Shown here one piece after another: positions 3,165 through 63,930 of a stretch of DNA of 64,000 nucleotides. The translations under genes and the position numbers were made by a program. Source of the stretch: Octopus sinensis (taxonomy: Eukaryota); the NCBI RefSeq assembly GCF_006345805.1, contig NC_043001.1, positions 104,594,001-104,658,000 of the forward strand, given 5' to 3'. The stretch's first letter is position 1. Each line of letters starts with the position of its first letter. Under the pieces are notes generated by a model. The model was not told the DNA's origin. It did no database searches and saw only the letters and a program-made list of their open reading frames with translations.

Positions 3165-4195
3165 ATATATCATCATCATTGTCATCGTTTAATGTCTGCT
3201 TTCCCTGCTGGCATGGGTTGGGTGGCTTGACTGAGGGATGGCAAGCCAGTAAACTGCACCAGGCTCCAATATGATCTGGCATAGTTTCTACAGCTGGATG
3301 CCCTTCCTAATGCCAACCACTCTGAGAGTGTAGTGCCACTGGCATGAGGGCCAGTCACACAATACTAGCATCGATTACACTTGAATGGTGCTTTTTACGT
3401 GCCACGGGCACAGGACCAATCAGGCAGCACTGGCATCAACCATGCTCAAATGATGCTTTTTACGTGTCACTGGCACGGGAGCCAGTCAGGCGGCTCTGGC
3501 AACGATCACACTCGAATGGTGCTTTTTACCTGTCACTGGTACAGGACAAGTCAGGCTGCACTGGCATTGACCATGCTTAATTGGTGCTTTTTATGTGCCA
3601 CCGGCATGGGTGCCAATCAGGTAGTACTGTCATTGACCATGACAATGACTTCACTTGACTCAACAGGTCTTTGTAAGGGCAGTTTATTGCCCAATGATTG
3701 AAGGCTACTATTAAATGAGCCAGTTATGCTGCGCTGGCATAGGCCACAGTTATGGTCTCACTTGATTTGCCGGATTTTCTCAAGCACAGCTTATCTCCAA
3801 AGGTCTCGGTCACTTGTCATCACCTCCATGAGGCCCAACGTTCGAAGGTCATGTTTTCACACCTCATCCCAGGTCTTCCTGGGCTACCTTTTCCACAAGT
3901 TTCCTCAACCGCTAGGTTGTGACACTTTCAAACCTGACAATACCAGGGCAGGTGTCTCTCTTGCACACCACATCTGATGCTTCTTATGTTCAACGTTTTT
4001 CTCAGGGTGTAATGTTGTGCATGCACACTGACATTACACATCCAGCGGAGCATACTAGCTTCTTTCTCTGTAAACTTCCGCATGTCCTCAGCAGTCATGG
4101 TCAATGTTTCACTGCCATGTAGCATAGCTATTCGCACACATGCATCATACAGTCTACCTGAGTGAGAGGCCTTTGTCACCAGCAGAGGTACTTTA
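3165..4195 (-). mobile_element. RTE LINE 3' fragment (RT C-terminus, 3'UTR and (TGA)n tail)
   Basis: ORF 3928-4290 contains GRLYDACVRIAMLHGSET...LRWMCNVSVH, homologous to 7450-7700 of the RTE copy at 4898. The 3'UTR repeats follow, and an (ATC)n tail lies near 3170-3185. Confidence 0.9.
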
Positions 4196-4891: not shown

Positions 4892-4897
4892 GATGAA

Positions 4898-7800
4898 GTT
4901 CCTGAAAGGTAGGCCTGGCGAGATAGTCGAGATGCTTGAACGGAGACGTGTTGATGTATGTTGCATGCAAGAAATAAGGTGGAGAGGAGGATCTGCTAGG
5001 TTCCTCACAGGCAAGGAACACAGGTACAAGATTTTCTGGGCAGGGAACACTGACGGGGTTGGTGGCGTGGGTATACTTATCGCTGAGAAATGGATAGATA
5101 GAGTAATTGAGGTAATCAGAGTAAGTGACAGAATACTTAAGATTAGAATAGTGCTTCATAATAGATTAGCAACCATTATATCGGCTTATGCCCCTCAGCC
5201 AGGGCTACCCAATGGACAGAAAGACAGCTTCTATGACACCCTACTGCAGACCACCTCATTGACGAACGACAGGGACCTTCTCTTTGTGGCTGGTGATTTC
5301 AATGGGCATGTTGGACGACATGCTGGGGGCTTCCATGGCGTACATGGAGGCTACGGTTATGGTTCCCGCAACGAGGAGGGAACCAGGCTGCTGGAGTTCT
5401 GCGATGCGAATAGTCTTATGGTCTGCAACACTAACTTCAGGAAACCAACAAGCCACCTGGTCACCTACCAATCGGGCCGGCATACTAGCCAAATCGACTA
5501 CATCCTTGCCAGAAAAAGGGAAAGATGGCTGCTTATAAATGCCAAAACCTTCCCAGGCGAAGAATGCACCCCACAACATAGACTGGTAGTTAGTGACTTT
5601 AGGATCAGGACTAAGAGGGCAACTAGAAGACGACCAACATGGAGAAGAAGGGTCTGGAAGCTTAAAGACCCTGCGAATGGACAGAGATTTAGAGATATGT
5701 TACTTGAAGCCTTTGACAAAGTGGAAGGGGGTATAGCTACACATGGGGTAGAAGACAACTGGACGTTTCTGAGGGACAACCTGCTGAAAGCCGCTGACCA
5801 GATCTGTGGCTGGTGCAAAGTCCCCTTAAGACCCAAAATAACGTGGTGGTGGAACAATATTGTTGACAGGGCTATTAGACAAAAGAAACAGGCTTGGAAA
5901 GCCTGGAAGAACGGTGGTAGCAGGGAAGTGTACCAGACTGCCAGAAGGAAAGCTAGGAGACAGGTCTATCTAGCCAGAGGGGAAGCAGATAAGAGAAAAT
6001 TTGCCAATGTCCTGCACCGTGAGGATGAAAGACTTGAGGTATTTTGTGTTGCAAGACAGTGTGTGAGAGAGAATCGTGATGTGGTAGGAGAGAAATGTGT
6101 TCGCATGGAGGATGTTCACTTGCGCTAAATGAGGATGCAAAGAGAGAAGCTTGGAGACGCCACTATGAAAGGTTGCTGAATGAGGAAAATGAATGGGATA
6201 AAGAGAGTCTGCCGAATGTTGACCCAACAGAGGGACCAGCTATCCGAGTTGATAGTTCCGTGGTAGCTAAGGCAATTAGAAGCATGAAGACAGGGAAAGC
6301 ACCAGGCCCATCAGGAATTACTGCAGATGCTCAAAATATCTGGTAGTGTCGGCTATAGCATAGTCACCCGTATAGTTAACCAGGTGATACACGAAGGAGT
6401 CATACCCAATGACTGGTGTAGCAGCATAATAGTCAACTGCTACAAAGGTAAAGGTGACGCCCTTGATACAAATAACTACAGGGGCATCAAGCTGTTGGAT
6501 CAGGTAATGAAGGTTACGGAGAGGGTTATAGCCCAGTTAATTAGAGAGAGAGTTAGCTTAGATGATATGCAGTTTGGGTTCGTGCCAGGGAAAAGTACTA
6601 CTGATGCTATATTCCTGGTAAGACAGCTGCAGGAGAAATACCTGGCCAAAGGTAAGCCCTTGTACCTGGCTTTTGTTGAATTAGAGAAAGCCTTTGACAG
6701 GGTCCCCCGATCCCTTATCTGGTGGTCAATGAGGAAACTAGGGATAGATGAATGGTTAGTGAGAGCTGTGAGAGCCATGTACAGAGACGCTGCTAGTAAG
6801 GTGAGGGTTGGCAACGGGTACAGTGAAGAATTCTGGGTAGAGGTTGGGGTCCACCAAGGTTCAGTCCTCAGCTCCCTCCTATTTATCATAGTCCTCAGGC
6901 AATAACGGAAGAATTTAAGACAGGATGCCCCTGGGAGCTCCTCTATGCCGATGACTTGCTCTAATTGCTGAGTCACTATCAGAACTGGAGGAGAAGTTTC
7001 AGGTGTGGAAACAAGGATTAGAATCGAAGGGCCTTAGAATCAACCTAGCCAAAACCAAAGTCCTAATAAGTAGGAAGGTGGACCAACCACAAACGACTTC
7101 AGGTAGATGGCCCTGCTCGATCTGTAAAAAGGTGTAGGTAGAACTCTATAAGGTGCACCAAGTGTAAGCTATGGACACATAAGAGGTGCAGCAATGTCAA
7201 AGGTAGGCTAACTGGGAAGATAGTTTTCGTATGTGGCAGATGCTCAGGAGAAATAAACATGGAAATGTGCAGAGACCAACTTCTACCACGTTCCAGGGAG
7301 AAAACTAGAAGTAGTTGATAGCTTCCGCTACCTAGGAGACCAAGTCAGTAGCGGGGGGTGGTGTGCTGAAAGTGTAACTGCTAGAGTAAGAATAGCCTGG
7401 GCAAAGTTTAGAGAGCTCTTACCCCTGCTGGTGACAAAAGGCCTCTCACTCAGAGTAAAAGGCAGACTTATGATGCATGTGTACGTACAGCCATGCTACA
7501 TGGTAGTGAACATGGGCCGTGACTGCTGAGGATATGCGTAAGCTCGCAAGAAATGAAGCCAGTATGCTCCGATGGATGTGTAATGTCAGTGTTCATAATC
7601 GTCAGAGTGTAAGTACTTGAGAGAAAAGTTGAACCTAAGAAGCGTCAGTTGTGGTGTGCAAGAGAGACGGCTGCGCTGGTATGGTCATATGACGAGAATG
7701 GCTGAAGATAGTTGTGTGCAAAAGTGCTACACCCTAGCAGTTGAGGGAACCTGTGGAAGAGGTAGACCCAGGAAAACCTGGGACGAAGTGTGTGAAGCAC

Positions 7801-8670
7801 GACCTACGAACTTTAGGTCTCACCAAGGAAATGACTAGAGACCGAGACCTATGGAAGTATGCTGTGCGTGAGAAGACCGGCAAGACTAGTCTGGCCATAA
7901 CCCGTGGCCCCTACCTGGGACGTAGTCAGTCCACCTGTGTACCTTCCTTCTTGTGACACTTGTGAAGACCTGTTGAGGCAAGTGAAAATCAAACAAAATC
8001 TAAATAGATGAACATCAATGGAATTTGTATCTTTGTGGTACCAGTGCCGGTGGCACACAAGAAAACCATCCGAACGTGGCCGTAGCCAGTACCGCACCGA
8101 CTGGCCTCCATGCTGTGTGGGCACGTAACAATCACCATCCAATCGTGGCCGATCGCCAGCCTAATCTGGCTCCTGTGTGGGTGGCACATAAAAAACACCA
8201 TCGAGCGTGGTCGTCTGCTAGCCTTGTCTGGCACCTGTGTCGGTGGCAATAAAAACCACCATCCGAGCGTGGCCGTTCGCCAGCCTCGTCTGGCACCTGT
8301 GTCGGTGGCACATAAAAACACCATCCGAGCGTGGTCGTCTGCTAGCCTTGTCTGGCACCTGTGTCGGGCACATAAAAACATCATCCGAGCGTGGCCGTTC
8401 GCCAGCTTCGTCTGGCACCTGTGTCGGTGGCACATAAAAACACCATCTGAGCGTGGCCGTTCGCCAGCTTGTCTGGCACCTGTGTCGGTGGCAAATAAAA
8501 TCACCCACTACACTCTCGGAGTGGTTGGCGTTAGGAAGGGCATCCAGCTGTAGAAACACTGCCAGATCTGACTGGCCTGGTGCAGCCTTTGGGCTCCCCA
8601 GACCCCAGTTGAACCGTCCAACCCATGCTAGCATGGAAAGCGGACGTTAAATGATGATGATGATGATGAT
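4898..8670 (+). mobile_element. Near-full-length RTE-clade LINE (APE endonuclease, RT, PHD-like finger, VNTR-containing 3'UTR, (TGA)n tail), slightly 5'-truncated
   Basis: ORF 4893-6128 has the APE motifs VCCMQE, SAYAPQ, AGDFNGHVG, SQIDYIL and QHRLVVSD. ORFs 6095-6346 and 6327-6905 carry RT motifs (NYRGIKLL, QFGF, KAFDRVP, GVHQGSVLS), and LLYADD follows near 6940. The tail is GTTAAA(TGA)n at 8646-8670, with TSD GATGAA at 4892-4897 and 8671-8676. Confidence 0.95.
8050..8495 (+). repeat. Tandem ~62-bp repeat (about 7 units) in the RTE 3'UTR
   Basis: Unit is roughly GGTGGCACATAAAAACACCATCCGAGCGTGGCCGTTCGCCAGCCTCGTCTGGCACCTGTGTC, with two variants partly alternating. Confidence 0.9.
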
Positions 8671-22558: not shown

Positions 22559-23114
22559 TTCTTAGCTAGCTGAAGCTATTAATATAATAGTTATGCAATG
22601 AGCTATGCTCAAAATAGCTAATCAACAGGCTGAGATTTCTTAAATTAAATGAAGGTTACATTGTTGCTTAGAATTTCTAAGTCTCCTACACCACAGTGGT
22701 GATTATGAACTGAAGAAAGAAGCCAGTAGTAAAAAATAAGATAAAATAAAAGTTAAGAAGTAAATCAAGGGAACCGATGAATGATAAAGCAAAGGGTGAG
22801 ACCCAAAATATGCAAGAGTGGGTGTGGTTTAGAGTTGAGGAATACAAAGAAAAAGAGAACAAGAAGGAAAGAAAAAAAAGAAGAGAGAAAAGGATTATAT
22901 CATTGGGAGAAAATACTGTGGTCATAAACTTTCATTCAAGAGATATGACATATGATATTTGCTCTGCAGAATACAAGATGCCAGTACATCGGCATACTCA
23001 TCTAGATCACAATATATACACACACTCACACATGTGCATACATGCTAACTCATGCACACATAACATAAAACTACTTAAGGGTGTATGGATGCTGTATTTT
23101 TTTATTCTTTTATT

Positions 23115-23440
23115 TGTTTCAGTCATGTGACTGTGGCCATGCTGGAGCACCACCTTTAGTTGAACAAATCGACCCCAGGACTTATTTTTGTAAGCCTAAT
23201 ACTTATTCTATCGGTCTCTTTTGCTGAATCGCTATGTTACGTGGAATTAAACACACCAAAATCAGTTGTCAAGCGATAGTGAGGCGACAAACACAAACAT
23301 ATATATATATGTATATATACATACAATGGGGTTCTTTCAGTTTCTGTCTACCAAATCCACTCACAAGGCTTTGGTTGCCCAAGGCGCCATACAGTGGGAC
23401 TGAACCCGGAACCATGTGGTTGTAAACAAGCTTTTATTCA
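23115..23440 (-). mobile_element. tRNA-derived SINE (family 'A' here; head like CAGGCGTGGCTGTGTGGTAAGAAGCTTG), representative copy
   Basis: tRNA-like head with GGTTCAGTCCC B-box, internal CA/TA tract, and tail ...CCAGCATGGCCACAGTCA.ATGACTGAAACAA. Other copies lie at about 2670-2900, 9770-10110, 10640-10990, 21278-21440, 24440-24790, 25685-25825, 27670-27970, 36680-37065, 44920-45070, 48445-48680 and 57810-58410. Confidence 0.85.
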
Positions 23441-23816: not shown

Positions 23817-23839
23817 CTATCTCGGTCAAATGTAGAATC
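23817..23839 (-). CDS. UBA-like repeat gene, exon 13, a 23-nt microexon: DSTFDRD(R)
   Basis: Strong acceptor ttattctttttctccag and donor AG|gtaagt. It provides the phase 0 to 2 change needed between its neighbours. Confidence 0.78.
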
Positions 23840-25828
23840 CTGGAGAAAAAGAATAAGAGAAAAAAATTTGTCATAATGCTCATAACAATAATAGTGATGA
23901 TGATGATGATGATGATGAAAATGATTATGGTGCTGGTGACTTTGACGAGATAAATGGTATGGAAGATGTTGTTTAGCATCAAGTGACCCCTGATGGATCT
24001 GATGTTAAATGGTGGAATTGTTGCTCATGAAGATAGTTAAGCGTAGTCAACATCATTGAATTAATGGCAATTTAAAAAGCAGTTATCAGTCAAAAATTCA
24101 AAAGGATATCAAGTTGTGCATGTGTGGCTATAACTGTCTCTTTTGTCTATCATGACAAGAATTGACCATTAAAGATAATGAAATTTTTTCTCCACAGCTG
24201 TTATTCTAATTGACAAAAAAAAAAGAAACACAATTAGGAGCTCACTACAATAAGTTTGTTAGCCTACAAACCATGAGATTGGTTAGTCAATTGGAGATGG
24301 TTGCTTCTTACAGGATCTGAAGGAAGATGTGCTTGACGATTCTACCCACACAATCCTCCCAGGAATAAGTGGGAGAAGATGTGCAGAGAAGAGATGAACA
24401 TACATTTAACTATATGTTCTTCATGCAGAAGGTATCTTTTATCTTTTGTCTTTTACTTGCTTCAGTCATTCGACTGTGGCCATGCTGAACTTTTAGTCGA
24501 AGAAATCAACCCCAGTAATTATTTATTTTTAATTATTCTATCAGTCTGATTTGCTGAACCACTACCAGTTGTCAATTAATGGTGAGGAACAGAGACACAC
24601 ACAGACACATGCGCATGCGCACGCACGCACACACACACACACACACAGGTTTCTTTCAGTATTGATCTCCAAAATCCACTCACAAAGCTTTGGACGTAGA
24701 TGACAGTGGCCAGAAGGGCCATGCGGTGGAACTGAACCCAGAGCCATGTGGTTGGGAAGCAAGCTTACCACACAGCCACACCTACACCTACACATAGGAA
24801 ATTTCCCTTTAAGTTGTCACAGCTGACAGGATGAGACAGGCATAAGAGTTATGTAAATATATATATTTGAATACATATATGTATCTCTATGTATGTGTGT
24901 GTACATGTGCATGAAGATGTATATTTATTTTTACCATGCATTCACTGCACAATTTTGTCTTAGAAAAATATTTTATCTCTACAGATTTTAAGCCAAGCTT
25001 CAAGTCACATCTGCACCCTACCAGACACAGTTTTCCAATGCAATTTCCCTCTTCAGTCATACATACTGCAGCAAGTACTTTTCAAGTTCTAATGTAGACA
25101 AACATATATTGATAGATAAATGTATACCACTTTATTTTAACTCACAGCATGTCTTGTGCTTAAACTAATTCCACCTTGGCAAGCCATAGAAAACACCAGT
25201 GAATGTATTGTTTGCTGCTTCCTGTATACAGAAATGAAAGTCCTCTCTTAGCTTCAAATGATAGAGGCTGTCTTTGCTACTGAAGAGGTGAAATCACTCT
25301 GAAACATTGTCTGATAGTTCAGTGTTATCACTTGGTACTTGATCGATGTGGCTTTACACACAGAATTTATAGAGTGAAAAGTTTTCTTTGTAATAAAAAT
25401 CCCACAGCAAATACCTTTCATGTTTTAGTGTACAAGAATGTGTTAAAATTAAAAGCACACATCCTTATTTTCATCCTTGCTGTTTCATGGTTTATACACA
25501 CACACATGTATATCACAGGTATGGCTCTGTAATACAAATTTTGCTTCACACTCAAGTAGTTCTAGGTTTGGTCCCACTGTTATATATTAAGCAAGTGTCT
25601 TCTGCTATAGACTGAAGCAGACCAATGCTTTAAGAGTGAAATTCTTAAAAAGAAACTGAGAGGCTCATAGTATGTGCATATATTAGGTGTGGTTGTGTGG
25701 TAAGAAGCTTGCTTCCCAACCATCTGGTTCCAGGATAAGTCCCACTGTTTGGCAACTAGGGCAAATGTCTTATACTATAGCCTTGGGCTGACCAAAGCCT
25801 TATGAGTTGATTTAGTAGGCATGCATGT

Positions 25829-28141: not shown

Positions 28142-28229
28142 CTCTTCCATTCTTTCCACTATATCTTTAAGTGGTTCACTGTCTCGATATATCTTGTAAA
28201 CATTGTTCAGAAACTCTTCCATCTTTTCC
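28142..28229 (-). CDS. UBA-like repeat gene, exon 11: (R)EKMEEFLNNVYKIYRDSEPLKDIVERMEE
   Basis: Acceptor gtttactttcag, donor GAG|gtaatg, 88 nt, phase 2 to 0. Confidence 0.88.
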
Positions 28230-28814
28230 CTGAAAGTAAACATCATCATAATAATGATCAACATTAACATAATGATGATGATGATGATGATGATTTCGTT
28301 TATTTGTCACAAGGGTGAAGGATGAGGGGGGGGGCAATACAAAGACAGACATAAAGTGTGGGGGTTTACATATGATGAAATGATAAAAATGAAAGAAAGT
28401 AAGAATACATGGTATACACTGACAAAGAAGGGACATATGCATTCACACAAAAGTTTAAAAGAAAAAAAGTGGTAGGGAGGATGATAGAGATGTGGCCCGC
28501 CTGATACAGGAAGGCTTCTAGGGATAATCGAGGAACCCAACTCTCCAAGATTTCCGTGAAATCTCAGGAGCAAGTGCCCTCACCAATAACTTCTCTCTAA
28601 CTCACAGGTCTACACTTAGAGAGGTACCATTCACTCTTGCCATTTTCCCAAATTTCACCTACCTTTCAATAAATTCACTCGATGACAACACTTCCCTCTT
28701 CACACTCAATTTCATTTACAACTGAAACTTGAAGAAGTCAATGACAGTTCTACTAAAGAGGAATGTAGTGAAGTGAAAGCACACTATAAACATAAAGCAA
28801 CTGAACAACAAACT

Positions 28815-29831
28815 GTTGTTTGATCCTAAGCTATTTCCTAATCCAACAAACCTATGGATCAAACAAGAACAGCAGCAGCAAACCTATAGTCAACACTGTT
28901 GACTATAGGTTTGTTGGATTAGGAAACATCCTAGGATCAAACAACAGCAACAGCAAACCTATAGTCAACACTGTTGACCATAGGTTTGTTGGATTAGGAA
29001 ACAGCTATGGATCAAACAAGAACAGCAACAGCAAACCTATAGTCAACACTGTTGACTATAGGTTTGTTGGATTAGGAAACAGCTATGGATCAAACATGAA
29101 CAGCAACAGCAAACCTATAGTCACCACTGTTGACTATAGGTTTGTTGGATTAGGAAACATCCTAGGATCAAACAACAGCAACAGCAAACCTATAGTCAAC
29201 ACTGTTTGGTTTGCTGTTGCTGTTGTTGTTGTTTGATCCTAAGCTTTTTACTAATCCATAAACCTATAGGTTTATGGATTAGTAAAAAGTGTTGACTATA
29301 GGCTTGCTGTGGTTGTTGTTATTGTTTGATCCTAAGCTCTTTCCTAATCCAACAAACCTATAGCCAACAGTATTGACTATAGCTTTGCTGTTGCTGTTGT
29401 TGATCTTTGATCCTAAGTTGTTTCCTAATCCAACAAACCTATAGTCAGCAGTGTTGACTATAGTGTTTTTGTTGTTGTTGTTGTTTGATCCTGAACTTTT
29501 TCTTAATCCAACAAACCTATAGTCAACATTATTGACTAAAGGGTTGTCCTTTTTGTTTGCTCCTAAGCTTTTTCCCAATCCAGCAAACCTATAGATGACA
29601 GTGTTGACTAAAGAGCTGTTGTTGTTGTTTAATCCTAAGCTCTTTCCTAATCCAACAAACCTATAGTCAACGCTGTTGACTATAGGTTTGTTGGATTAGG
29701 AAACAACTTAGGATGAAACAACATCAAAAGCTAACCTATAGTCAACACTGTTGACTATAGGTTTATGGATTAGGAAAAAGCTTTGGATCAAACAACAACA
29801 ACAGCAACAGCAAACCTATAGTCAACACTGT
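28815..29831. repeat. Palindrome-cored minisatellite (~72-82 bp units, about 13 hairpins) with orientation switches
   Basis: Core AAACCTATAGTCAACA-C-TGTTGACTATAGGTTT at 28880, 28955, 29033, 29111, 29657 and others. Spacers are related to GTTGGATTAGGAAAC...GGATCAAAC(AAC/AGC)n or its reverse complement. Confidence 0.95.
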
Positions 29832-30158
29832 GGTGCTCCAACATAACTACAGTCAAATGACTGAAACAAATAAAACAATAAAAAGCAACAGAAGCAGTAT
29901 TAATACCAACATAAATAATCTTTTCCACTCTAAGTACAAGGCCCGAAATTTTTGAGAAGAGAGCCAGTTGATTAGATCGACTTCAGTACGCAACTGGTAC
30001 TTAATTATCGACCCCAAAAGGATGAAAGACAAAGTCAACCTCAGTAGAATTTGAACTCAGAACATAAAAGACAGATGCAATACCGCTATACATTTCGCCC
30101 AGTGTGCTAACGTTTCTGCCAGCTTGCTGCCTTACCAAAATAAATAATAAATACATAC

Positions 30159-30226
30159 CTGAACTCATAATGATACACTCCATATGTTTTGTAGGCAACA
30201 TAGAGATCACTTAAATGAAGAGCAAC
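30159..30226 (-). CDS. UBA-like repeat gene, exon 10: VALHLSDLYVAYKTYGVYHYEF(R)
   Basis: Acceptor gctatctttccag, donor AG|gtatgt, 68 nt, phase 0 to 2. Confidence 0.88.
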
Positions 30227-39017: not shown

Positions 39018-39747
39018 ATATGTGGTACGAATAGATGAGGACAGCTGTGTGAAAAAGTGTCACACCCTAGCAGTTGAGGGAATCTGTGGAAGAGGTAGAC
39101 CCAGGAAGACCTGGAATGAGGAGGTGAAGCACAACCTTCGAACATTGAGCCTCACAAAGGCAATGACTAGTGACCAAGACCTTTGGAAATATGCTGTGTT
39201 TGAGAAGACCCAGCAAGTTAAGTGACACCATAACCCATGACCTATGCCAGCGGTGTAACTAGCCTACTTATGCATTGCTTGCAAAGACCTATCGAGGCAA
39301 GTGAAATCACAATCAAAATCAAATTCACAGACATAGCCAATAACAGCACCACCTGACTGACACCCATGCCAGTGGAATGTTAAAAGCACCATCCGAACAT
39401 GATCGTTGCCAGGGCTGCTGACTGGCTCCTGTGCCGGTGGCATATAAAAAGCACCATTCAAGTGTGATCGTTACCAGCATGGCCTTACTGGCTCCTGTGC
39501 AGGTGGCACATAAAAAACACCATTTGAGCGTGGCCGTCACCAGTACCACCTGACTGGCCCTCGTGCTGGTGGCACGTAAAAGCACCCACTATACTCTCAG
39601 AGTGGTTGGAATTAGGAAGAGCTTCCAACCGTAGAAACTCTACTAGATCAGATTGGAGTCTGGTGCAGCCATCTGGCTTGCCAGTCCTCAGTCAAACCGT
39701 CCAACTCCTGCCAGCATGGAAAGCAGACGTTAAATGATTATGATGAT
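39018..39747 (+). mobile_element. RTE LINE 3' fragment with about four 3'UTR repeat units and tail
   Basis: ORF 39022-39225 (DEDSCVKKCHTLAVEGICGRGRPRKTW) matches 7700-7880 of the 4898 copy. The copy ends GACGTTAAATGATTATGATGATG. Confidence 0.9.
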
Positions 39748-41225: not shown

Positions 41226-42784
41226 TTATGACCTCCATACCTTGAGGGTACGCCCAGGCACTTTCCACCATTTATCTCTCTCTTCTTTACTCTACCATCC
41301 CATCTTATGCTCTGATCCTCATTCCTTGTGAGTATACCTGGCACTTTGCCACCACCCCTCTCCTGTGCATTCTCTTGCACACTTGCTGTCTTCCACTCTC
41401 TCTGTCTTTCCCTCACTTTTCCCTCTGGTTGGATAACCACATATTCCCTCTACAGCAGTACACGTGTTTCTGCCCTCATTCTTGATCATTCTCTTTCTCT
41501 CCTTCTCTTACTCTTCCCTAATCATGTATCTCCTTTACAGCAGCACACCTACTTTTGTCCTCATTCTTGTTAACTCTCTTTCTCTCTCTCTCTCTGATTG
41601 GGTAACCATGTACCTCATCTACAGCAAGACACCCTTCTTCTTAAAAACTTTTAGCATCTGATATAAGATCACTTCCTCCAATTACTCCTTCCCTCCCCAA
41701 AATTCTTTGTCTTGCAAGTTACTTGGAGATCCTGCTAGTGTTGGTGTCCTGTAAAAAGTATCCAGTCCACACTGTAAAGTGGTTGGCATTTGGAAGGGAT
41801 CCAGCTGTAAAAACAATGCCACAAAGCTGACCTTGCCTGTGCTAGTGCCATATAAAAAGCACACAGTCAACTATGTGGGGTGGTTGATGTCAGAAAGGGC
41901 ATCCAGCCTTAAAAACCAGCCAAAACACACACAGAAGTTTAGTGTAGTTTTCTGCCAGGCCAGCTCCTATTAAACCATCCAACCCATTCAAGGTAGGCGT
42001 TAAACAATGATGATGCTGATGATGTTAGTATTTGTAAAAAACCAACACAGTTAAAACACTATGTGCAATAAAATCTGCTTAATGTTTACAGGTGTTGTTC
42101 AGTTATTTCTTCATGCAACCCAAGGAATATATTTTCATTTAATCAGTCATTTACCTCATACCAGCCAACAATAACAACAACAGCCCACAAGTCCATTTAA
42201 TACTGCCATAATATAATTCCTAGCTTCTTCAAAATACTGCTTTGTATCACTGCCTTCATTTTCCCTTCTCCACATAGCTAACTACTGAAATATTTGATCC
42301 CACTATATTTTTTCATCCCCACCCCCGCTTTACTATGAAATTCAGTTTGTTTACTTGCTTCATTGTGTGTTTTGGTATATCACAATCCATTGAAGCTATG
42401 GGGACCTCCAGTTTTTCTTTTCATGAGTGATTACCAGTCCATTCTAATATCTCACTGAAACATTCAGAAAATAATACTCACCCTTCATCTCCTTCTTTTA
42501 AAAGGATTATTTCATTATCACCTTCAACAGAAACGCACTCCCCAGGCATAAGAATGTGTTCCTCAGACTCTTTAGATGTATGCTTGACTATTCTCAAGTG
42601 TCTGGACAAAGTCTACAAAACAATATGCATTACACAAGTTAAACAGAATAATCGAAGAAAATTGATGATTGCCTGCTTCTGCCTACAACAAATGTAAAAT
42701 GTTCAACGAAAATAATCATTAGGCTAATGATGTCATGTATAAAACACTTATGCTGGTTCGATGAATAAAGCATCCATACTGATG

Positions 42785-43045
42785 CCATGTTAAAAGCATC
42801 CATGCTAGTGCCATGTAAAAAGCACTGGTGCTGGTGCCATACAAAAAGCACTGGTGATGGTGCCACATAAAAAGCACTGGTGATGGTGTCACATAAAAAG
42901 CACTGGTGATGGTGCCACATGAAAAGTACTGGTGCTGGCTCCATGTAAAAAGCACTGGTGTGCCACGTAAAAATCACTGGTGCTCATTTTATATAAAAAG
43001 CACTGGTGATGGTTCTGCATATAAAGTACTCATATTGCCACATAA
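42785..43045 (+). repeat. Tandem ~26-bp repeat (about 10 units) at the 5' end of an RTE-tail element
   Basis: Unit GATGGTGCCACATAAAAAGCACTGGT, running into the standard ...GCACCC..CACT...GTGGTTGGCATTA.GAAG.GCATCCAGC 3' module. Confidence 0.85.
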
Positions 43046-43334
43046 AAAGCACCCAGACCACTGTAAAGTGGTTGGCATTAAGAAGAGCATCCAGCCACAG
43101 AAACCATGCCAAAACAGATAATTGGAGCCTGGTACAGCATTCTGGCTGGTCAGCTCCTCTCAGACCATCCAACCCATGCCAGCATGGAAAATAGATGCTT
43201 AATGATAATGACAATGGTGATGACGACGACAATGATGATAACAATGGTGATGACGACGACAATGATGATGACAATGAAGCTAATGATTTTGTTCTCTTCA
43301 CTATGGGTTTAACTTCCATTTATTACAATTTCTT

Positions 43335-45749: not shown

Positions 45750-46480
45750 AATCATCATCATCATCATCGTTTAGCGTCCGTTTTCCGCGCTAGCACGGGT
45801 TGGATGGTTCGACCGGGGTCTGGGAAGCCAGGGGCTGCACCAGGCTCCAGTCTGATCTGGCAGTGTTTCTACAGATGGATGCCCTTCCTAACGCCAACCA
45901 CTCCACGAGTGTAGTGGGTGCTTTTTATGTGCCACCTGCACAGGTGCCAGGGGAATCTGGCATTGGCCACGATCGGTTGGTGCTTTTAACGTGCCACCGG
46001 CACAGAAGCCAGCCAAGGCGGCGCTGGCAACGGCCACGTTTGGATGGTGCTTTTTATGTGCCACCGACACAGAAGCCAGTCGAGGCGGTGCTGGCATCGG
46101 CCACGTTTGGATGGTGCTTTTCATGTGCCACCGGCACAGAAGCCAGTCAAGGCGGCGCTGCCAATGGCCACATTCGGATGGTGCTTTTTATGTAGAATAC
46201 GAATAGCCTGGGCAAAGTTCAGAAAGCTCCTACCCCTACTGGCGACAAAGGGTCTCTCGCTCAAAGTGAAAGGTAGATTGTATGACGCATGTGTGCGAAC
46301 TGCCATGCTTCACGGTAGTGAAACATGGGCTGTGACTGCAGAGGACATGCGTAGACTTGAAAGGAATGAAGCTAGCATGATCCGCTGGATGTGTAATGTC
46401 AGTGTGCGCGCACGACAGAGGGTAAGCACCTTGAGAGAAATGCTGGACATAAGAAGCATCAGATGTGGTGTGCAAGAGAA
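45750..46480 (-). mobile_element. RTE insertion with an inverted 5' segment
   Basis: 45750-46190 is the 3'UTR and (TGA)n tail on the minus strand. 46195-46480 is RTE coding sequence (RIAWAKFRKLLPLL...GRLYDACVR) on the plus strand. Confidence 0.8.
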
Positions 46481-48397: not shown

Positions 48398-50105
48398 ATA
48401 TGTTTATAGTATCACTTACATTCATGTATCAGGTTATATAATCTATCTTTTACTTGTTTCATTAATCAGACTGTGGCCATGCTGGGGTACTACCTTGAAC
48501 AATTTTAATCAACCCCAGAACTTTTCTTTTAAACTTGGTGCTTATCTTATTAGTCTCTTTTGCCGAACCATTAAGTTATGGGGACATAAACATGCTGACA
48601 TTGGTTTACAAGTGGGGGGGGGAACAAACACAGATACAAAGACACACACACACGTGTGTGCCCCCCCCTTACACACACACATACACACATACAGAGTATG
48701 CAAGAAAGGATCTGGAAACCCAGAAGATGACTTTCAGTCATGGATTGTGCATAACAAATAAAGGATAGAATTGGTATTACACTAATTGTACCATTTACAA
48801 TTATTTCAATAAAAAATGGTTGACAAATCATATACTTTTGAAAACATAGAAGATAATGATATTCTTTTCTATTCTAGGCACAAGGCCCGAAGTTTTTGGG
48901 GAGGGTGCCAGTTGATTAGATTGACCCTAGTATGCAACTGGTGCTTAATTTATCAACCCTGAAAGGATAAAAGGCAAAGTCGACCTTGGTGGAATTTGAA
49001 CTCAGAACATAAAGACAGATAAAATACTGCTAAGCATTTCGCCTAGCTCGCCACCTTATAGGAGATAATGATATTGTCATATTGATTATATAAAATGTAT
49101 TATATAATGGTGAAGACACGTGGCTCAGTGGTTAGAGTATCTGGCTTACAATCAAAAGATCTAAGTTTAATTCCCAGCAGCATGATGTGTCATTCAGCAA
49201 GACACTTTATGTTGCTCCACTTCACTCAGCTGTCAGAAATAAGTAGTACCTGTATTTCAAAGGGCCAGATTTGAGTACTCAACCAGTTGCACATTAATTC
49301 TATGAGCAGACTGTCATGTTGATCGGATCAACTGGCACACTCATCATCACAACTGACAGAGTGCCAATATTGTACAATAACTGACTGATAGTAAGCACCC
49401 TTCATTCGGTGGGTGATATGCAAAGCACCCTTCAATTATTGGATGATATGCTGTGCCTGTGAAAACCTGTCAAACCAAGTGAAATCATATGCATGGCTGA
49501 TGTCAGTGTCAGGCCGGTGGCATGTAAAATACACTCACTACACTTTTGGAGTGGTTGGCATTAGGAAGGGCATCCAACCATAGAAACCTTGCCAAATCAG
49601 ATTGGAAACTGGTGCAGCCCACCAGCTTACCAGTTTTCAGTCAAACCGTCTAACACATGCCACCAGGAAAGCAGATGTTAAATGACGATGATGATGATAG
49701 TCATAACTTTTGTGAGCAATTAGACATAGTTACAAAATGAATGAGTTTACTTATATATGGGCACATGAGAGATGTTTAATTAATTAAGATAGCAGGGCTT
49801 ATTGTTAGAAATGTCAATAAAGAAAAAGTGGATTGCAATGTAATTGTATTTCTTAACAAGAACATTTTACAAGTTCCTTTCATTAATCAATCCATAAATT
49901 CAGACATTTGTCTAGTTGAGACAGTGAAACATTTCAAAATGTATAATAAATTCATCCACTCTGATCTCTATTTGACAAACTGTTAGACTACATGACATAA
50001 AAGTGATTCAGCATAAACACACATATATACATAAATCAAAAGCAAGCTTGTTAGCCTAACAAGTAAGACTGCAGTAGTAGACAAATAAAATGAAAAGTGA
50101 CTTAC

Positions 50106-63452: not shown

Positions 63453-63534
63453 CCACCTGAATCCAAATTTTGGATTCATTTATTCAAAGGAATTTGTAGA
63501 AGACGCCATATCCTATTTCTTTACTGCCCACATG

Positions 63535-63930
63535 GGGCTACATACAGAGGGGACAAACAAGGACAGACAAACGGATTAAGTCGATTATATCGACCCCAGT
63601 GCGTAACTGGTACTTATTTAATCGACCCCGAAAGGATGAAAGGCAAAGTCGACCCCGGCGGAATTTGAACTCAGAACGTAACCGCAGACGGAATACCTAT
63701 TTCTTTACTACCCACAAGGGGCTAAACACAGAGGGGACAAACAAGGACAGACAAATGGATTAAGTCGATTACATCGATCTCAGTACATAACTGGTACTTA
63801 ATTTATCAACCCCGAAAGGATGAAAGGCAAAATTGACCTCAGAGGAATTTGAACTCAGAACGTAACAGCAGACGAAATATGGCTACGCATTTCGCCCAGC
63901 GTGCTAACGATTCTGCCAGCTCGCCCCCTT
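63535..63930 (-). mobile_element. Tandem pair of family C SINEs
   Basis: Two copies of ...TTAAGTCGATTA.ATCGA.C.CAGT...CCCGAAAGGATGAAAGGCAAA...GAATTTGAACTCAGAACGTAAC, with a period of about 180 bp. Confidence 0.88.

What the first reader, a model, noticed from the sequence alone, without database searches (positions are those of the whole stretch)
28815..29831. Array of 33-bp hairpins whose spacers flip orientation at the hairpins
Seen: about 13 copies of AAACCTATAGTCAACA-C-TGTTGACTATAGGTTT (16-bp stem, 1-nt loop) separated by related spacers of about 38-49 nt. Spacers run forward (28860-29206), reverse (29213-29656), then forward again (29690-29831), and both switches fall on a palindrome. 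At 29244-29289 the hairpin has collapsed to a perfect 46-bp palindrome around AAACCTATAGGTTT. The first forward block is near-identical (spacers 42-45-45-42 nt), while the reverse block is more diverged. The array abuts a SINE tail at 29828. Inference: it grew by hairpin-primed fold-back synthesis or template switching, as in rolling-hairpin replication. It should form cruciforms and a long branched dsRNA in the host pre-mRNA, about 590 nt upstream of the exon 11 acceptor. It looks CRISPR-like, but the spacers are homologous to one another.
Basis: partly seen in the sequence, partly recalled or inferred. Interest (0 to 1): 0.75.

Follow-up and report, generated by a model that had tools for sequence, protein, structure and literature searches.

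The report
Orientation-flipping palindromic minisatellite in octopus intron
A 1-kb tandem repeat inside an intron of an uncharacterised Octopus sinensis gene is built from 75-81-bp units that each carry a 33-bp palindrome, and blocks of units have been turned around at the palindromes; it is a real and tidy example of palindrome-driven DNA rearrangement, most likely with no function of its own.

Summary
Window 28814-29828 holds about 13 units of 72-81 bp. Each unit is a 33-bp palindrome plus a 39-48-nt spacer ending in a (CAA/CAG)n tract. Orientation runs R(partial)-F5-R6-F2, and the palindrome's odd centre base flips with the unit (C in F, G in R). The five other minisatellite arrays in the window never flip. 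The window matches Octopus sinensis. The array fills 53% of a 1.93-kb intron of LOC115212235, 586 nt upstream of the acceptor of the eighth coding exon; "exon 11" could not be verified.

Growth was mainly ordinary head-to-tail duplication: 8 of 13 junctions are head-to-tail and the young F1 block is 93% identical. The large flips show no mirror-image order of variants, so they fit inversion of an internal block at two palindromes better than fold-back copying. Both junction palindromes are damaged next to their centres. One event is a textbook template switch: 20 nt at 29270-29289 are the exact reverse complement of the preceding 20 nt, which makes the perfect 46-bp palindrome.

Old palindromes decay with no compensatory changes, so nothing suggests selection for the hairpin. 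Rolling-hairpin replication is not supported. The pre-mRNA should fold into a roughly 390-bp duplex (z = -37). Whether other copies exist in the genome could not be tested.

The parts
28814..28847 (.). Left end of the array: a partial spacer in reverse orientation (S0)
   Evidence: 94% identical to R spacers S6 and S10 when reverse-complemented. The flank to its left shows no array homology.
28848..28856 (.). R->F junction AAACCTA|TGGATC: a 7-nt stub of a left arm joined to the middle of a forward spacer, with CTAT microhomology
   Evidence: Read directly from the sequence. This is the only orientation switch that does not lie on a palindrome centre.
28855..29206 (+). Forward block F1: 4 full units plus a partial spacer (S0b), with the left arm and centre of the damaged switch palindrome (29186-29211) at its right end. 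Two private spacer variants (ATCCTAGG and AGCTATGG). Young.
   Evidence: S1 = S4 at 100%, S2/S3 at 98%, S0b/S2 at 96%. Mean whole-unit identity is 93%. TRF finds period 78, 4.6 copies.
29186..29211 (.). F->R switch palindrome: intact left arm and centre C, with a net 6-nt deletion in the right arm starting 4 nt after the centre
   Evidence: Segmentation, compared with the consensus 33-mer.
29212..29656 (-). Reverse block: 6 units (S5-S10). Old and diverged; its palindromes have centre G (one has T).
   Evidence: Mean unit identity is 78%. TRF finds period 72, 76% matches.
29244..29289 (.). Perfect 46-bp palindrome. Its right 20 nt (29270-29289, GTTTATGGATTAGTAAAAAG) are a template-switch insertion.
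   Evidence: The insertion is the exact reverse complement of 29244-29263 and replaces the TCAACAG present in the 97%-identical sister copy at 29732-29828. DNA hairpin energy is -19.0 kcal/mol, z = -11.
29657..29689 (.). R->F switch palindrome: complete 33-mer with centre C and an A->G change next to the centre (29672)
29690..29828 (+). Forward block F2: 2 units (S11, S12), ending exactly at a palindrome centre
   Evidence: U11 is 92% identical to F1 type A. S12 is 96-97% identical to the reverse complement of S5 (I23, 27, 62).
29830..29884 (+). 5'-truncated 3' end of a SINE (family tail ...GGTGCTCCAGCATGGCCACAGTCAAATGACTGAAAC), joined at the palindrome centre
   Evidence: 89% identical to the copy at 23099-23153. 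There are 7 copies of the tail motif in the window against 0.12 expected.
29914..30124 (-). A second SINE of a different family, lying between the array and the upstream exon
   Evidence: 77-84% identical to at least 8 other copies in the window.
30159..30226 (-). Host coding exon 7 of LOC115212235 (aa ~213-235)
   Evidence: Splice signals read. tblastn of P0121.
28142..28229 (-). Host coding exon 8 (aa ~235-264). Its acceptor lies 586 nt downstream of the array in the direction of transcription.
   Evidence: The two exons together match XP_036358878.1 at 100% over 52 aa.

Best explanation
This is a locally evolved, probably non-functional minisatellite in an intron of the Octopus sinensis gene LOC115212235. 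Each unit (72-81 bp) has three parts: a 33-bp palindrome, a roughly 30-nt weakly self-complementary stretch, and a slippage-prone (CAA/CAG)n tract.

The array grew mainly by ordinary head-to-tail duplication (unequal exchange or replication slippage). The F1 block is the most recent expansion.

Every palindrome is its own inverted repeat and can fold into a hairpin or cruciform, so the array is prone to rearrangements that start at palindromes. Three kinds are seen:
- An internal block of about six units was inverted between two palindromes. Both junction palindromes now carry damage next to their centres.
- A short replication template switch at the inner CCTATAGG palindrome created the perfect 46-bp palindrome.
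- The array ends exactly at a palindrome centre, where a 5'-truncated SINE copy is joined.

Shown: the anatomy, the orientations, the relationships between units, the template-switch signature and the lack of compensatory change.

Inferred: the order of events, inversion as the cause of the big flips, and breakage at hairpin tips.

The one likely consequence is that the intron RNA folds into roughly 390-bp and shorter imperfect duplexes. These would be substrates for ADAR or Dicer-type enzymes. This is predicted, not observed.
For: The flipping is specific to this array: five other minisatellite arrays in the window are uniformly oriented.

Tandem growth: 8 of 13 junctions are head-to-tail, and F1 units are 90-99% identical with private variants.

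Inversion rather than fold-back copying:
- There is no mirror symmetry of variants around either switch palindrome.
- F1 type A is closest to U11 (92%) and type B to U12 (88%), so F1 and F2 look like one forward array that has been interrupted.
- The leftmost R spacer S5 is 96-97% identical to S12. This fits S5 having sat next to S11-S12 before an inversion.

Palindrome-centred lesions: a deletion starting 4 nt after the centre at 29207, an A->G at 29672 next to the centre, the template-switch return point at 29289/29290 at a centre, and the array end at 29828 on a centre.

Template switch: an exact 20-nt reverse-complement replacement relative to the sister copy. This matches the four-point template-switch model (PMC5453318, PMC8794818).

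Neutral decay: 0 of 16 stem pairs show compensatory change and 14 cells are unpaired, all from one-sided changes.

Not coding: the 138-aa open frame has no protein relatives.

Not derived from the neighbouring SINE: alignment scores equal those of shuffles.

RNA folding: -465 kcal/mol against -196 +/- 7 for shuffles, z = -37; -609 kcal/mol for the whole array.

Hairpin-mediated foldback inversions and hairpin-primed synthesis are established in yeast (PMC7467729, PMC10622511).
Against: - The genome outside this 64-kb window could not be searched, so a transposon origin of the unit, or of the whole array, is not excluded.
- The unit relationships do not give a unique history. With only 13 units, the number of orientation switches (3 among full units) is not significantly lower than random orientation would give (p about 0.07, my calculation).
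- The two ends of the array are inverted relative to each other (R at the left, F at the right), and S5/S12 form a 97% inverted pair. Both features also resemble terminal inverted repeats.
- A 33-bp palindrome is short for homologous recombination in animals, so the enzymology of the inversion is uncertain.
- No read-level check of the assembly was possible.
Confidence: 0.6

Rival explanations
1. The array is a copy, or nested or rearranged copies, of a non-autonomous DNA transposon with repeat-filled inverted arms. Candidates are a foldback-type element, a MITE-derived tandem array, or the central repeats of a mollusc Helentron-type element. In that case it belongs to a dispersed family, and the flips reflect the element's built-in inverted architecture.
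For: - The array has sharp boundaries against unique DNA on the left and a SINE on the right.
- Its ends are inverted relative to each other, and the outermost pair of the 29208-29828 part (S5/S12) is 97% complementary while the inner units are 70-88%. Conserved termini with variable inner repeats are what foldback elements show (PMC4079207).
- Each unit, read from palindrome centre to palindrome centre, has perfect 16-bp inverted ends.
- Mollusc genomes carry many short satellite-like arrays inside mobile elements, and stem-loop models for their amplification exist (PMC8268682).
- This genome region is dense with repeats that contain tandem arrays.
Against: - No second copy of the arm, the spacer or the unit was found in the other 63 kb of the window or in 41 kb of other octopus DNA; only (CAA)n hits appeared.
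- There is no convincing target-site duplication. The best flanking direct repeat is 12 nt with 1 mismatch, p about 0.05, in A-rich sequence.
- There is no non-repetitive terminal domain.
- Orientation is R-F-R-F, not one left arm and one right arm.
- Between units there is a single C/G rather than a known duplication such as TA, TWA or 8 bp.
- The F1 block has private variants, which indicates in-place amplification.
Confidence: 0.25
2. The array grew by repeated hairpin-primed fold-back synthesis. A 3' end folds on a palindrome and copies back along its own strand, adding inverted copies each time.
For: - The 46-bp perfect palindrome is exactly this kind of product on a small scale.
- Switches lie on palindromes.
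- Foldback priming at breaks is documented (PMC10622511, PMC7467729). A stem-loop self-priming model for repeat amplification has been proposed for MITEs (cited in PMC8268682).
Against: - Fold-back copying predicts mirror-image order and high identity of the units on either side of each switch. The observed identities are 82-87%, no higher than for any other pair.
- Most junctions are head-to-tail.
- The closest inverted pair (S5/S12) is not symmetric about any switch palindrome.
Confidence: 0.1
3. The orientation switches are assembly or consensus artefacts of long-read sequencing through a palindromic repeat.
For: Palindromic repeats are hard for assemblers, and no reads could be examined. 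The record that carries the host gene is a chromosome-scale assembly, GCA_006345805.1.
Against: - The inverted blocks are not copies of each other. F1 against R is 82% identical with private variants, so a chimeric read or a missed adapter cannot have produced them.
- The array is only 1 kb and is flanked by unique sequence and by two host exons in the correct order and strand. Single long reads would therefore span it.
Confidence: 0.05

Closest known systems
Minisatellites and short satellite-like arrays with inverted blocks or subunits
   Same: Tandem units of tens of bp in a kb-scale array in non-coding DNA. Growth is by unequal exchange or slippage, younger homogeneous blocks sit next to older diverged ones, and parts of the array have switched strand.
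   Different: Here every unit carries a perfect or near-perfect 33-bp palindrome, and all switches map to palindrome sequence. No published description of this unit was found: a full-text search for the 13-mers gave 0 papers.
Foldback transposons (Drosophila FB, Tetris; PMC4079207)
   Same: Long inverted arms made of tandem repeats, many rearranged forms, and the ability to seed satellite arrays.
   Different: Foldback elements have a non-repetitive terminal domain, a middle domain, 8-10-bp target-site duplications and many genomic copies. None of these was found here. The orientation pattern here is R-F-R-F.
Short template-switch mutations (four-point model; PMC5453318, PMC8794818)
   Same: The 20-nt segment at 29270-29289 is an exact reverse complement of adjacent sequence and replaces the original 7 nt. 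It creates a perfect hairpin in one step.
   Different: That model explains one small event in the array, not the kb-scale block orientation.
Hairpin-mediated foldback inversions and inverted duplications at DNA breaks (yeast; PMC7467729, PMC10622511)
   Same: Short inverted repeats fold into hairpins in single-stranded DNA and set the breakpoints of inverted rearrangements. Here the junction lesions sit at palindrome centres.
   Different: Those events give mirror-image duplications. The two large switches here lack mirror symmetry.
MITE- or Helentron-associated tandem arrays of molluscs and the stem-loop amplification models (reviewed in PMC8268682)
   Same: The host is a mollusc, the arrays are short and scattered, a microsatellite is associated with the repeats, and palindromes are proposed to prime back-copying.
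   Different: The oyster arrays have 160-180-bp monomers flanked by conserved element boxes. Here the microsatellite is inside every unit, and no conserved boxes or other copies could be shown.
Inverted repeat pairs in introns as ADAR hyper-editing substrates (PMC5625713)
   Same: Intronic inverted repeats are predicted to form long dsRNA in the pre-mRNA.
   Different: The duplex here comes from one array folding on itself. No RNA data were available.

Membership tests
Minisatellite (tandem repeat) | Head-to-tail copies of a 10-100-bp unit forming an array of hundreds to thousands of bp | tested here: met
   TRF finds periods of 72-78 bp, and 153/159-bp dimers. There are about 13 units over 1015 bp.
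Foldback transposon | Two long terminal inverted repeats, one left arm and one right arm, with a conserved non-repetitive terminal domain | tested here: not met
   Orientation is R-F-R-F. The repeats run to both edges, and the flanks have no array homology or shared terminal domain.
Foldback transposon | Target-site duplication of 8-10 bp flanking the element | tested here: inconclusive
   No duplication lies directly at the array edges. The best flanking direct repeat is 12 nt with 1 mismatch, displaced from the edges, and 50 of 1000 shuffles do as well.
Foldback transposon / MITE / Helentron-type element | Multiple dispersed copies in the genome | not testable with these tools
   No copy in the rest of the window or in 41 kb of other octopus DNA. 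The octopus genome itself could not be searched. The metagenome, viral and prokaryote collections gave 0 hits.
MITE | Terminal inverted repeats plus a superfamily-typical target-site duplication around each element | tested here: not met
   Units have 16-bp inverted ends, but they are separated by a single C/G, not by TA, TWA, TTAA or 8 bp.
Rolling-hairpin replicon | Orientation alternates at every terminal hairpin, giving head-to-head and tail-to-tail concatemers of identical units | tested here: not met
   8 of 13 junctions are head-to-tail, and there are no mirror-identical neighbours.
Rolling-hairpin replicon | An initiator nuclease gene nearby | not tested
   The long ORFs in the window are LINE endonuclease or reverse-transcriptase fragments and repeat-derived frames. 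No dedicated search was made.
CRISPR array | Identical repeats separated by unique, unrelated spacers in a prokaryotic genome | tested here: not met
   The spacers are 72-100% identical to one another. The locus is an intron of an octopus gene.
microRNA cluster | Hairpins of pre-miRNA size matching a curated family | tested here: not met
   No Rfam family reaches its gathering score. The best hit is MIR821 at 79 bits against 249. The unit hairpin has a stem of only 15-19 bp.
Long-hairpin RNA (hpRNA-like) locus | A transcribed long inverted repeat that folds into an extended duplex | tested here: met
   Only the predicted fold was tested: -465 kcal/mol, z = -37, a nearly continuous duplex of about 390 bp on the transcribed strand.
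Long-hairpin RNA (hpRNA-like) locus | Small RNAs or editing clusters that map to the arms | not testable with these tools
   No RNA data were available.
Short template-switch mutation | A cluster of changes explained by copying the reverse complement of nearby sequence, with the ancestral state known | tested here: met
   29270-29289 is the exact reverse complement of 29244-29263. The 97% sister copy keeps TCAACAG at that place.

The most novel reading that the evidence does not exclude
The array is one member of an undescribed octopus family of hairpin-array elements that spread or rearrange through their palindromes. Separately or in addition, it acts as an intronic long-hairpin RNA source: an ADAR sponge, a hyper-editing site or a siRNA precursor that influences expression or splicing of LOC115212235.
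Probability: 0.1. Interest if true: 0.6.

Novelty: new member of a known kind. Interest (0 to 1): 0.3.

Why it matters
The locus is a compact natural record of what palindromes do to a tandem repeat. Within 1 kb it shows block inversion, a one-step template switch that makes a perfect 46-bp hairpin, breakpoints at palindrome centres, and capture of a truncated SINE at a centre. That makes it a good teaching or test case for detecting template switches and inversions in repeats.

It is also a candidate fragile or polymorphic site in an octopus gene. If it is transcribed as predicted, it gives a roughly 390-bp dsRNA in an animal known for heavy RNA editing. It does not reveal a new mechanism.

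Tried and rejected
1. Origin of the unit from the adjoining SINE. I saw a resemblance by eye between the arm and the SINE's ...TTTAGTCGAACAAATCGAC... region. Local alignment scores equal those of shuffles for all six SINE copies in both orientations, so this is rejected.
2. Array extending into the flanks. There is no significant homology at 28560-28814 or 29960-30160, and only a weak A-rich match at 29868-29960 (11 of 500 shuffles).
3. Coding repeat. The array is open for 138 aa (+) and 99 aa (-) because unit lengths change in steps of 3 through (CAA/CAG)n slippage. No protein relative was found, so this is rejected.
4. Target-site duplication around array plus SINE tail: marginal, p about 0.05.
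5. The palindrome core in metagenome, viral and prokaryote genome collections: 0 hits. In full-text papers: 0 hits.
6. Host gene identification from a 52-aa peptide failed in the word-indexed protein search, PDB and Pfam. It succeeded with the exhaustive representative search.
7. My two crude splice-site scripts found few real exons. tblastn with the protein replaced them.
8. Retrieval of the orthologous or own locus failed: the gene spans 310 kb, so no DNA was returned. The window's LINE ORF is not on record.
9. Sampling other octopus DNA was limited to two loci, 41 kb in all, with no copies. This has too little power to say anything about copy number.
10. Rfam gave only sub-threshold matches to generic long-hairpin models.

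Full report
**What is there.** The region 28814-29828 is a tandem array of about 13 units of 72-81 bp.
- The 33-mer AAACCTATAGTCAACA-N-TGTTGACTATAGGTTT is found 9 times at <=3 mismatches, against 0.00 expected.
- There are 12 left arms and 10 right arms at <=3 mismatches, all between 28880 and 29827.
- Segmentation gives ten full 33-mers and four damaged ones. Full spacers are 39-48 nt.
- Each spacer has two parts: a roughly 30-nt stretch that is weakly self-complementary (GTTGGATTAGGAAACA-TCCTAGGATCAAAC) and a (CAA/CAG)n tract. Slippage in that tract explains why unit lengths differ in steps of three, and why the array happens to be open for 138 and 99 codons.
- Those frames have no protein relatives.

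**Orientation.**
- Aligning all spacers in one orientation and scanning with the consensus unit on both strands gives: a partial reverse spacer (28814-47), forward block F1 (28855-29206), reverse block (29212-29656) and forward block F2 (29690-29828).
- The odd centre base of the palindrome is C in forward units and G in reverse units. Whole units, not only spacers, are therefore turned.
- A 20-nt forward patch (29270-29289) sits inside the reverse block.
- In all, 5 of 13 junctions are inverted and 8 are head-to-tail.
- The five other minisatellite arrays in the window (62-67-bp units) are uniformly oriented. Flipping is a property of this array.

**Where it is.**
- Two exons flank the array on the minus strand: 30226-30159 and 28229-28142.
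- Their joint 52-aa translation matches one protein in 1.84 billion at 100%: XP_036358878.1, uncharacterized protein LOC115212235 of Octopus sinensis. It is 1935 aa long and has UBA-like domains.
- tblastn places residues 1-383, apart from aa ~265-291 (the ninth coding exon, seen only as a splice-script candidate near 23817-23998), on the window's minus strand in eleven segments whose exon portions are essentially identical to the protein. The window therefore matches O. sinensis.
- The array lies in the 1.93-kb intron between coding exons 7 and 8 and makes up 53% of it. It is 586 nt from the acceptor.
- The left flank is unique sequence.
- On the right, a 55-bp 3' end of a SINE abuts the array (89% identical to another copy), followed by a second SINE on the other strand.
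- A LINE ORF in the window has its closest named relatives in O. bimaculoides and O. sinensis.

**History that can be read from the units.**
- F1 is young. S1 = S4 (100%), S2/S3 are 98% identical, and whole units average 93%, with two private variants. The reverse block averages 78%.
- Fold-back copying predicts that the spacers on either side of a switch palindrome are mirror copies of each other. They are not: S4/S5 85%, S3/S6 82%, S10/S11 87%, S9/S12 82%. These values are no higher than background.
- Instead, F1 type A is closest to U11 (92%) and type B to U12 (88%). The leftmost reverse spacer S5 is 96-97% identical to the reverse complement of S12.
- This fits one forward array in which an internal block of about six units was inverted between two palindromes, followed by expansion of F1.
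- Both junction palindromes are damaged next to their centres: a net 6-nt deletion from 29207 and an A->G at 29672. Forward palindromes P1, P3 and P12 have intact centres, while P4 carries A->C three bases before its centre.
- The array also ends exactly on a palindrome centre, where the truncated SINE is joined.
- These centre-located lesions are what breakage at hairpin or cruciform tips would leave. That reading is an inference, supported by yeast work on hairpin-mediated foldback inversions (PMC7467729, PMC10622511).

**The 46-bp palindrome.**
- Compared with its 97% sister copy (the reverse complement of 29732-29828), the unit at 29208-29305 has TCAACAG replaced by GTTTATGGATTAGTAAAAAG.
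- That 20-nt segment is the exact reverse complement of the 20 nt lying 6 nt upstream, across the self-complementary CTATAG core.
- This is the signature of a short template switch during replication (PMC5453318). Such switches are known to create perfect hairpins in one step (PMC8794818).
- It is younger than the S5/S12 split, because it copies an S5-specific base.

**No sign of selection for the hairpin.** In ten aligned palindromes, none of the 16 stem pairs shows a compensatory change. All 14 broken cells come from one-sided mutations, mostly in the old reverse units.

**Predicted physical consequences.**
- As DNA, the 33-mer folds at -13.1 kcal/mol and the 46-mer at -19.0 kcal/mol.
- As pre-mRNA (minus strand), F1 and the reverse block pair into a nearly continuous duplex of about 390 bp: -465 kcal/mol against -196 +/- 7 for shuffles, z = -37.
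- The full array folds at -609 kcal/mol into three long helices.
- Long intronic duplexes are typical hyper-editing substrates across animals, including octopus (PMC5625713). No expression data could be examined.

**What it is not.**
- It is not CRISPR: the spacers are homologous to one another and the locus is a eukaryotic intron.
- It is not a known RNA family.
- It is not derived from the neighbouring SINE.
- It is not a rolling-hairpin product, because most junctions are head-to-tail.
- It is unlikely to be an assembly chimera. The inverted blocks differ by about 18% and have private variants, and the 1-kb array lies between unique sequence and correctly ordered exons.

**What stays open.**
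- I could not test whether the unit occurs elsewhere in the genome. The three public DNA collections contain no match, the literature contains none, and only 41 kb of other octopus DNA could be fetched.
- A transposon origin therefore remains a serious rival. Candidates are a foldback-type element (PMC4079207) or the MITE/Helentron-linked arrays common in molluscs (PMC8268682).
- The defining features that could be tested were not met: a left-arm/right-arm architecture, a terminal domain and a target-site duplication.

Noticed in passing
window 3333-3641, 8120-8505, 39344-39586, 42779-43052, 45917-46193: A dispersed family of tandem arrays with 62-67-bp units (about GGTGCTTTTTACGTGCCACCGGCACAGG...; one array has a 26/52-bp period). 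It occurs on both strands across the window but is uniformly oriented within each array, and it is embedded in LINE/SINE-like repeats. The unit has its own small palindrome, GTGCCACCGGCAC.
   Followed up: partly
window 50210-2142, minus strand: Coding exons for residues 1-383 of XP_036358878.1 (LOC115212235). The protein has UBA-like domains near the N-terminus, then about 30 tandem repeats of roughly 38 aa (K.LA..YF....EY..F), then a long Ala/Glu/Lys-rich tail. The gene spans 310 kb, and no function is annotated.
   Followed up: partly
window 4893-6905 (+): A LINE with endonuclease and reverse-transcriptase reading frames. The closest named relatives are annotated 'craniofacial development protein 2-like' in O. 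bimaculoides (81%) and O. sinensis (67%), a naming that comes from the endonuclease domain.
   Followed up: partly
window 63512-63879: Two tandem 184-bp copies (89% identical) of the same SINE family that lies at 29914-30124.
   Followed up: no
window 49120-49178 (+): The only Rfam hit at gathering score in the window is a tRNA-like sequence (29.9 bits against a cut-off of 29). It is probably the head of a tRNA-derived SINE rather than a tRNA gene.
   Followed up: no
window 28794-28805 and 29882-29893: A direct repeat AAAGCAACTGAA / AAAGCAACAGAA flanks the array plus the SINE tail. It is marginal (50 of 1000 shuffles do as well) and lies in A-rich sequence, so it may be chance.
   Followed up: yes
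window 28880-29764 (aligned palindromes): In unit orientation, the right arm's outer 9 nt (TATAGGTTT) are invariant in all 10 full palindromes. The left arm's outer part, next to the (CAA/CAG)n tract, carries much of the substitution (9 of the 16), the rest lying near the centre. This may be a mutational effect of the adjoining microsatellite.
   Followed up: no
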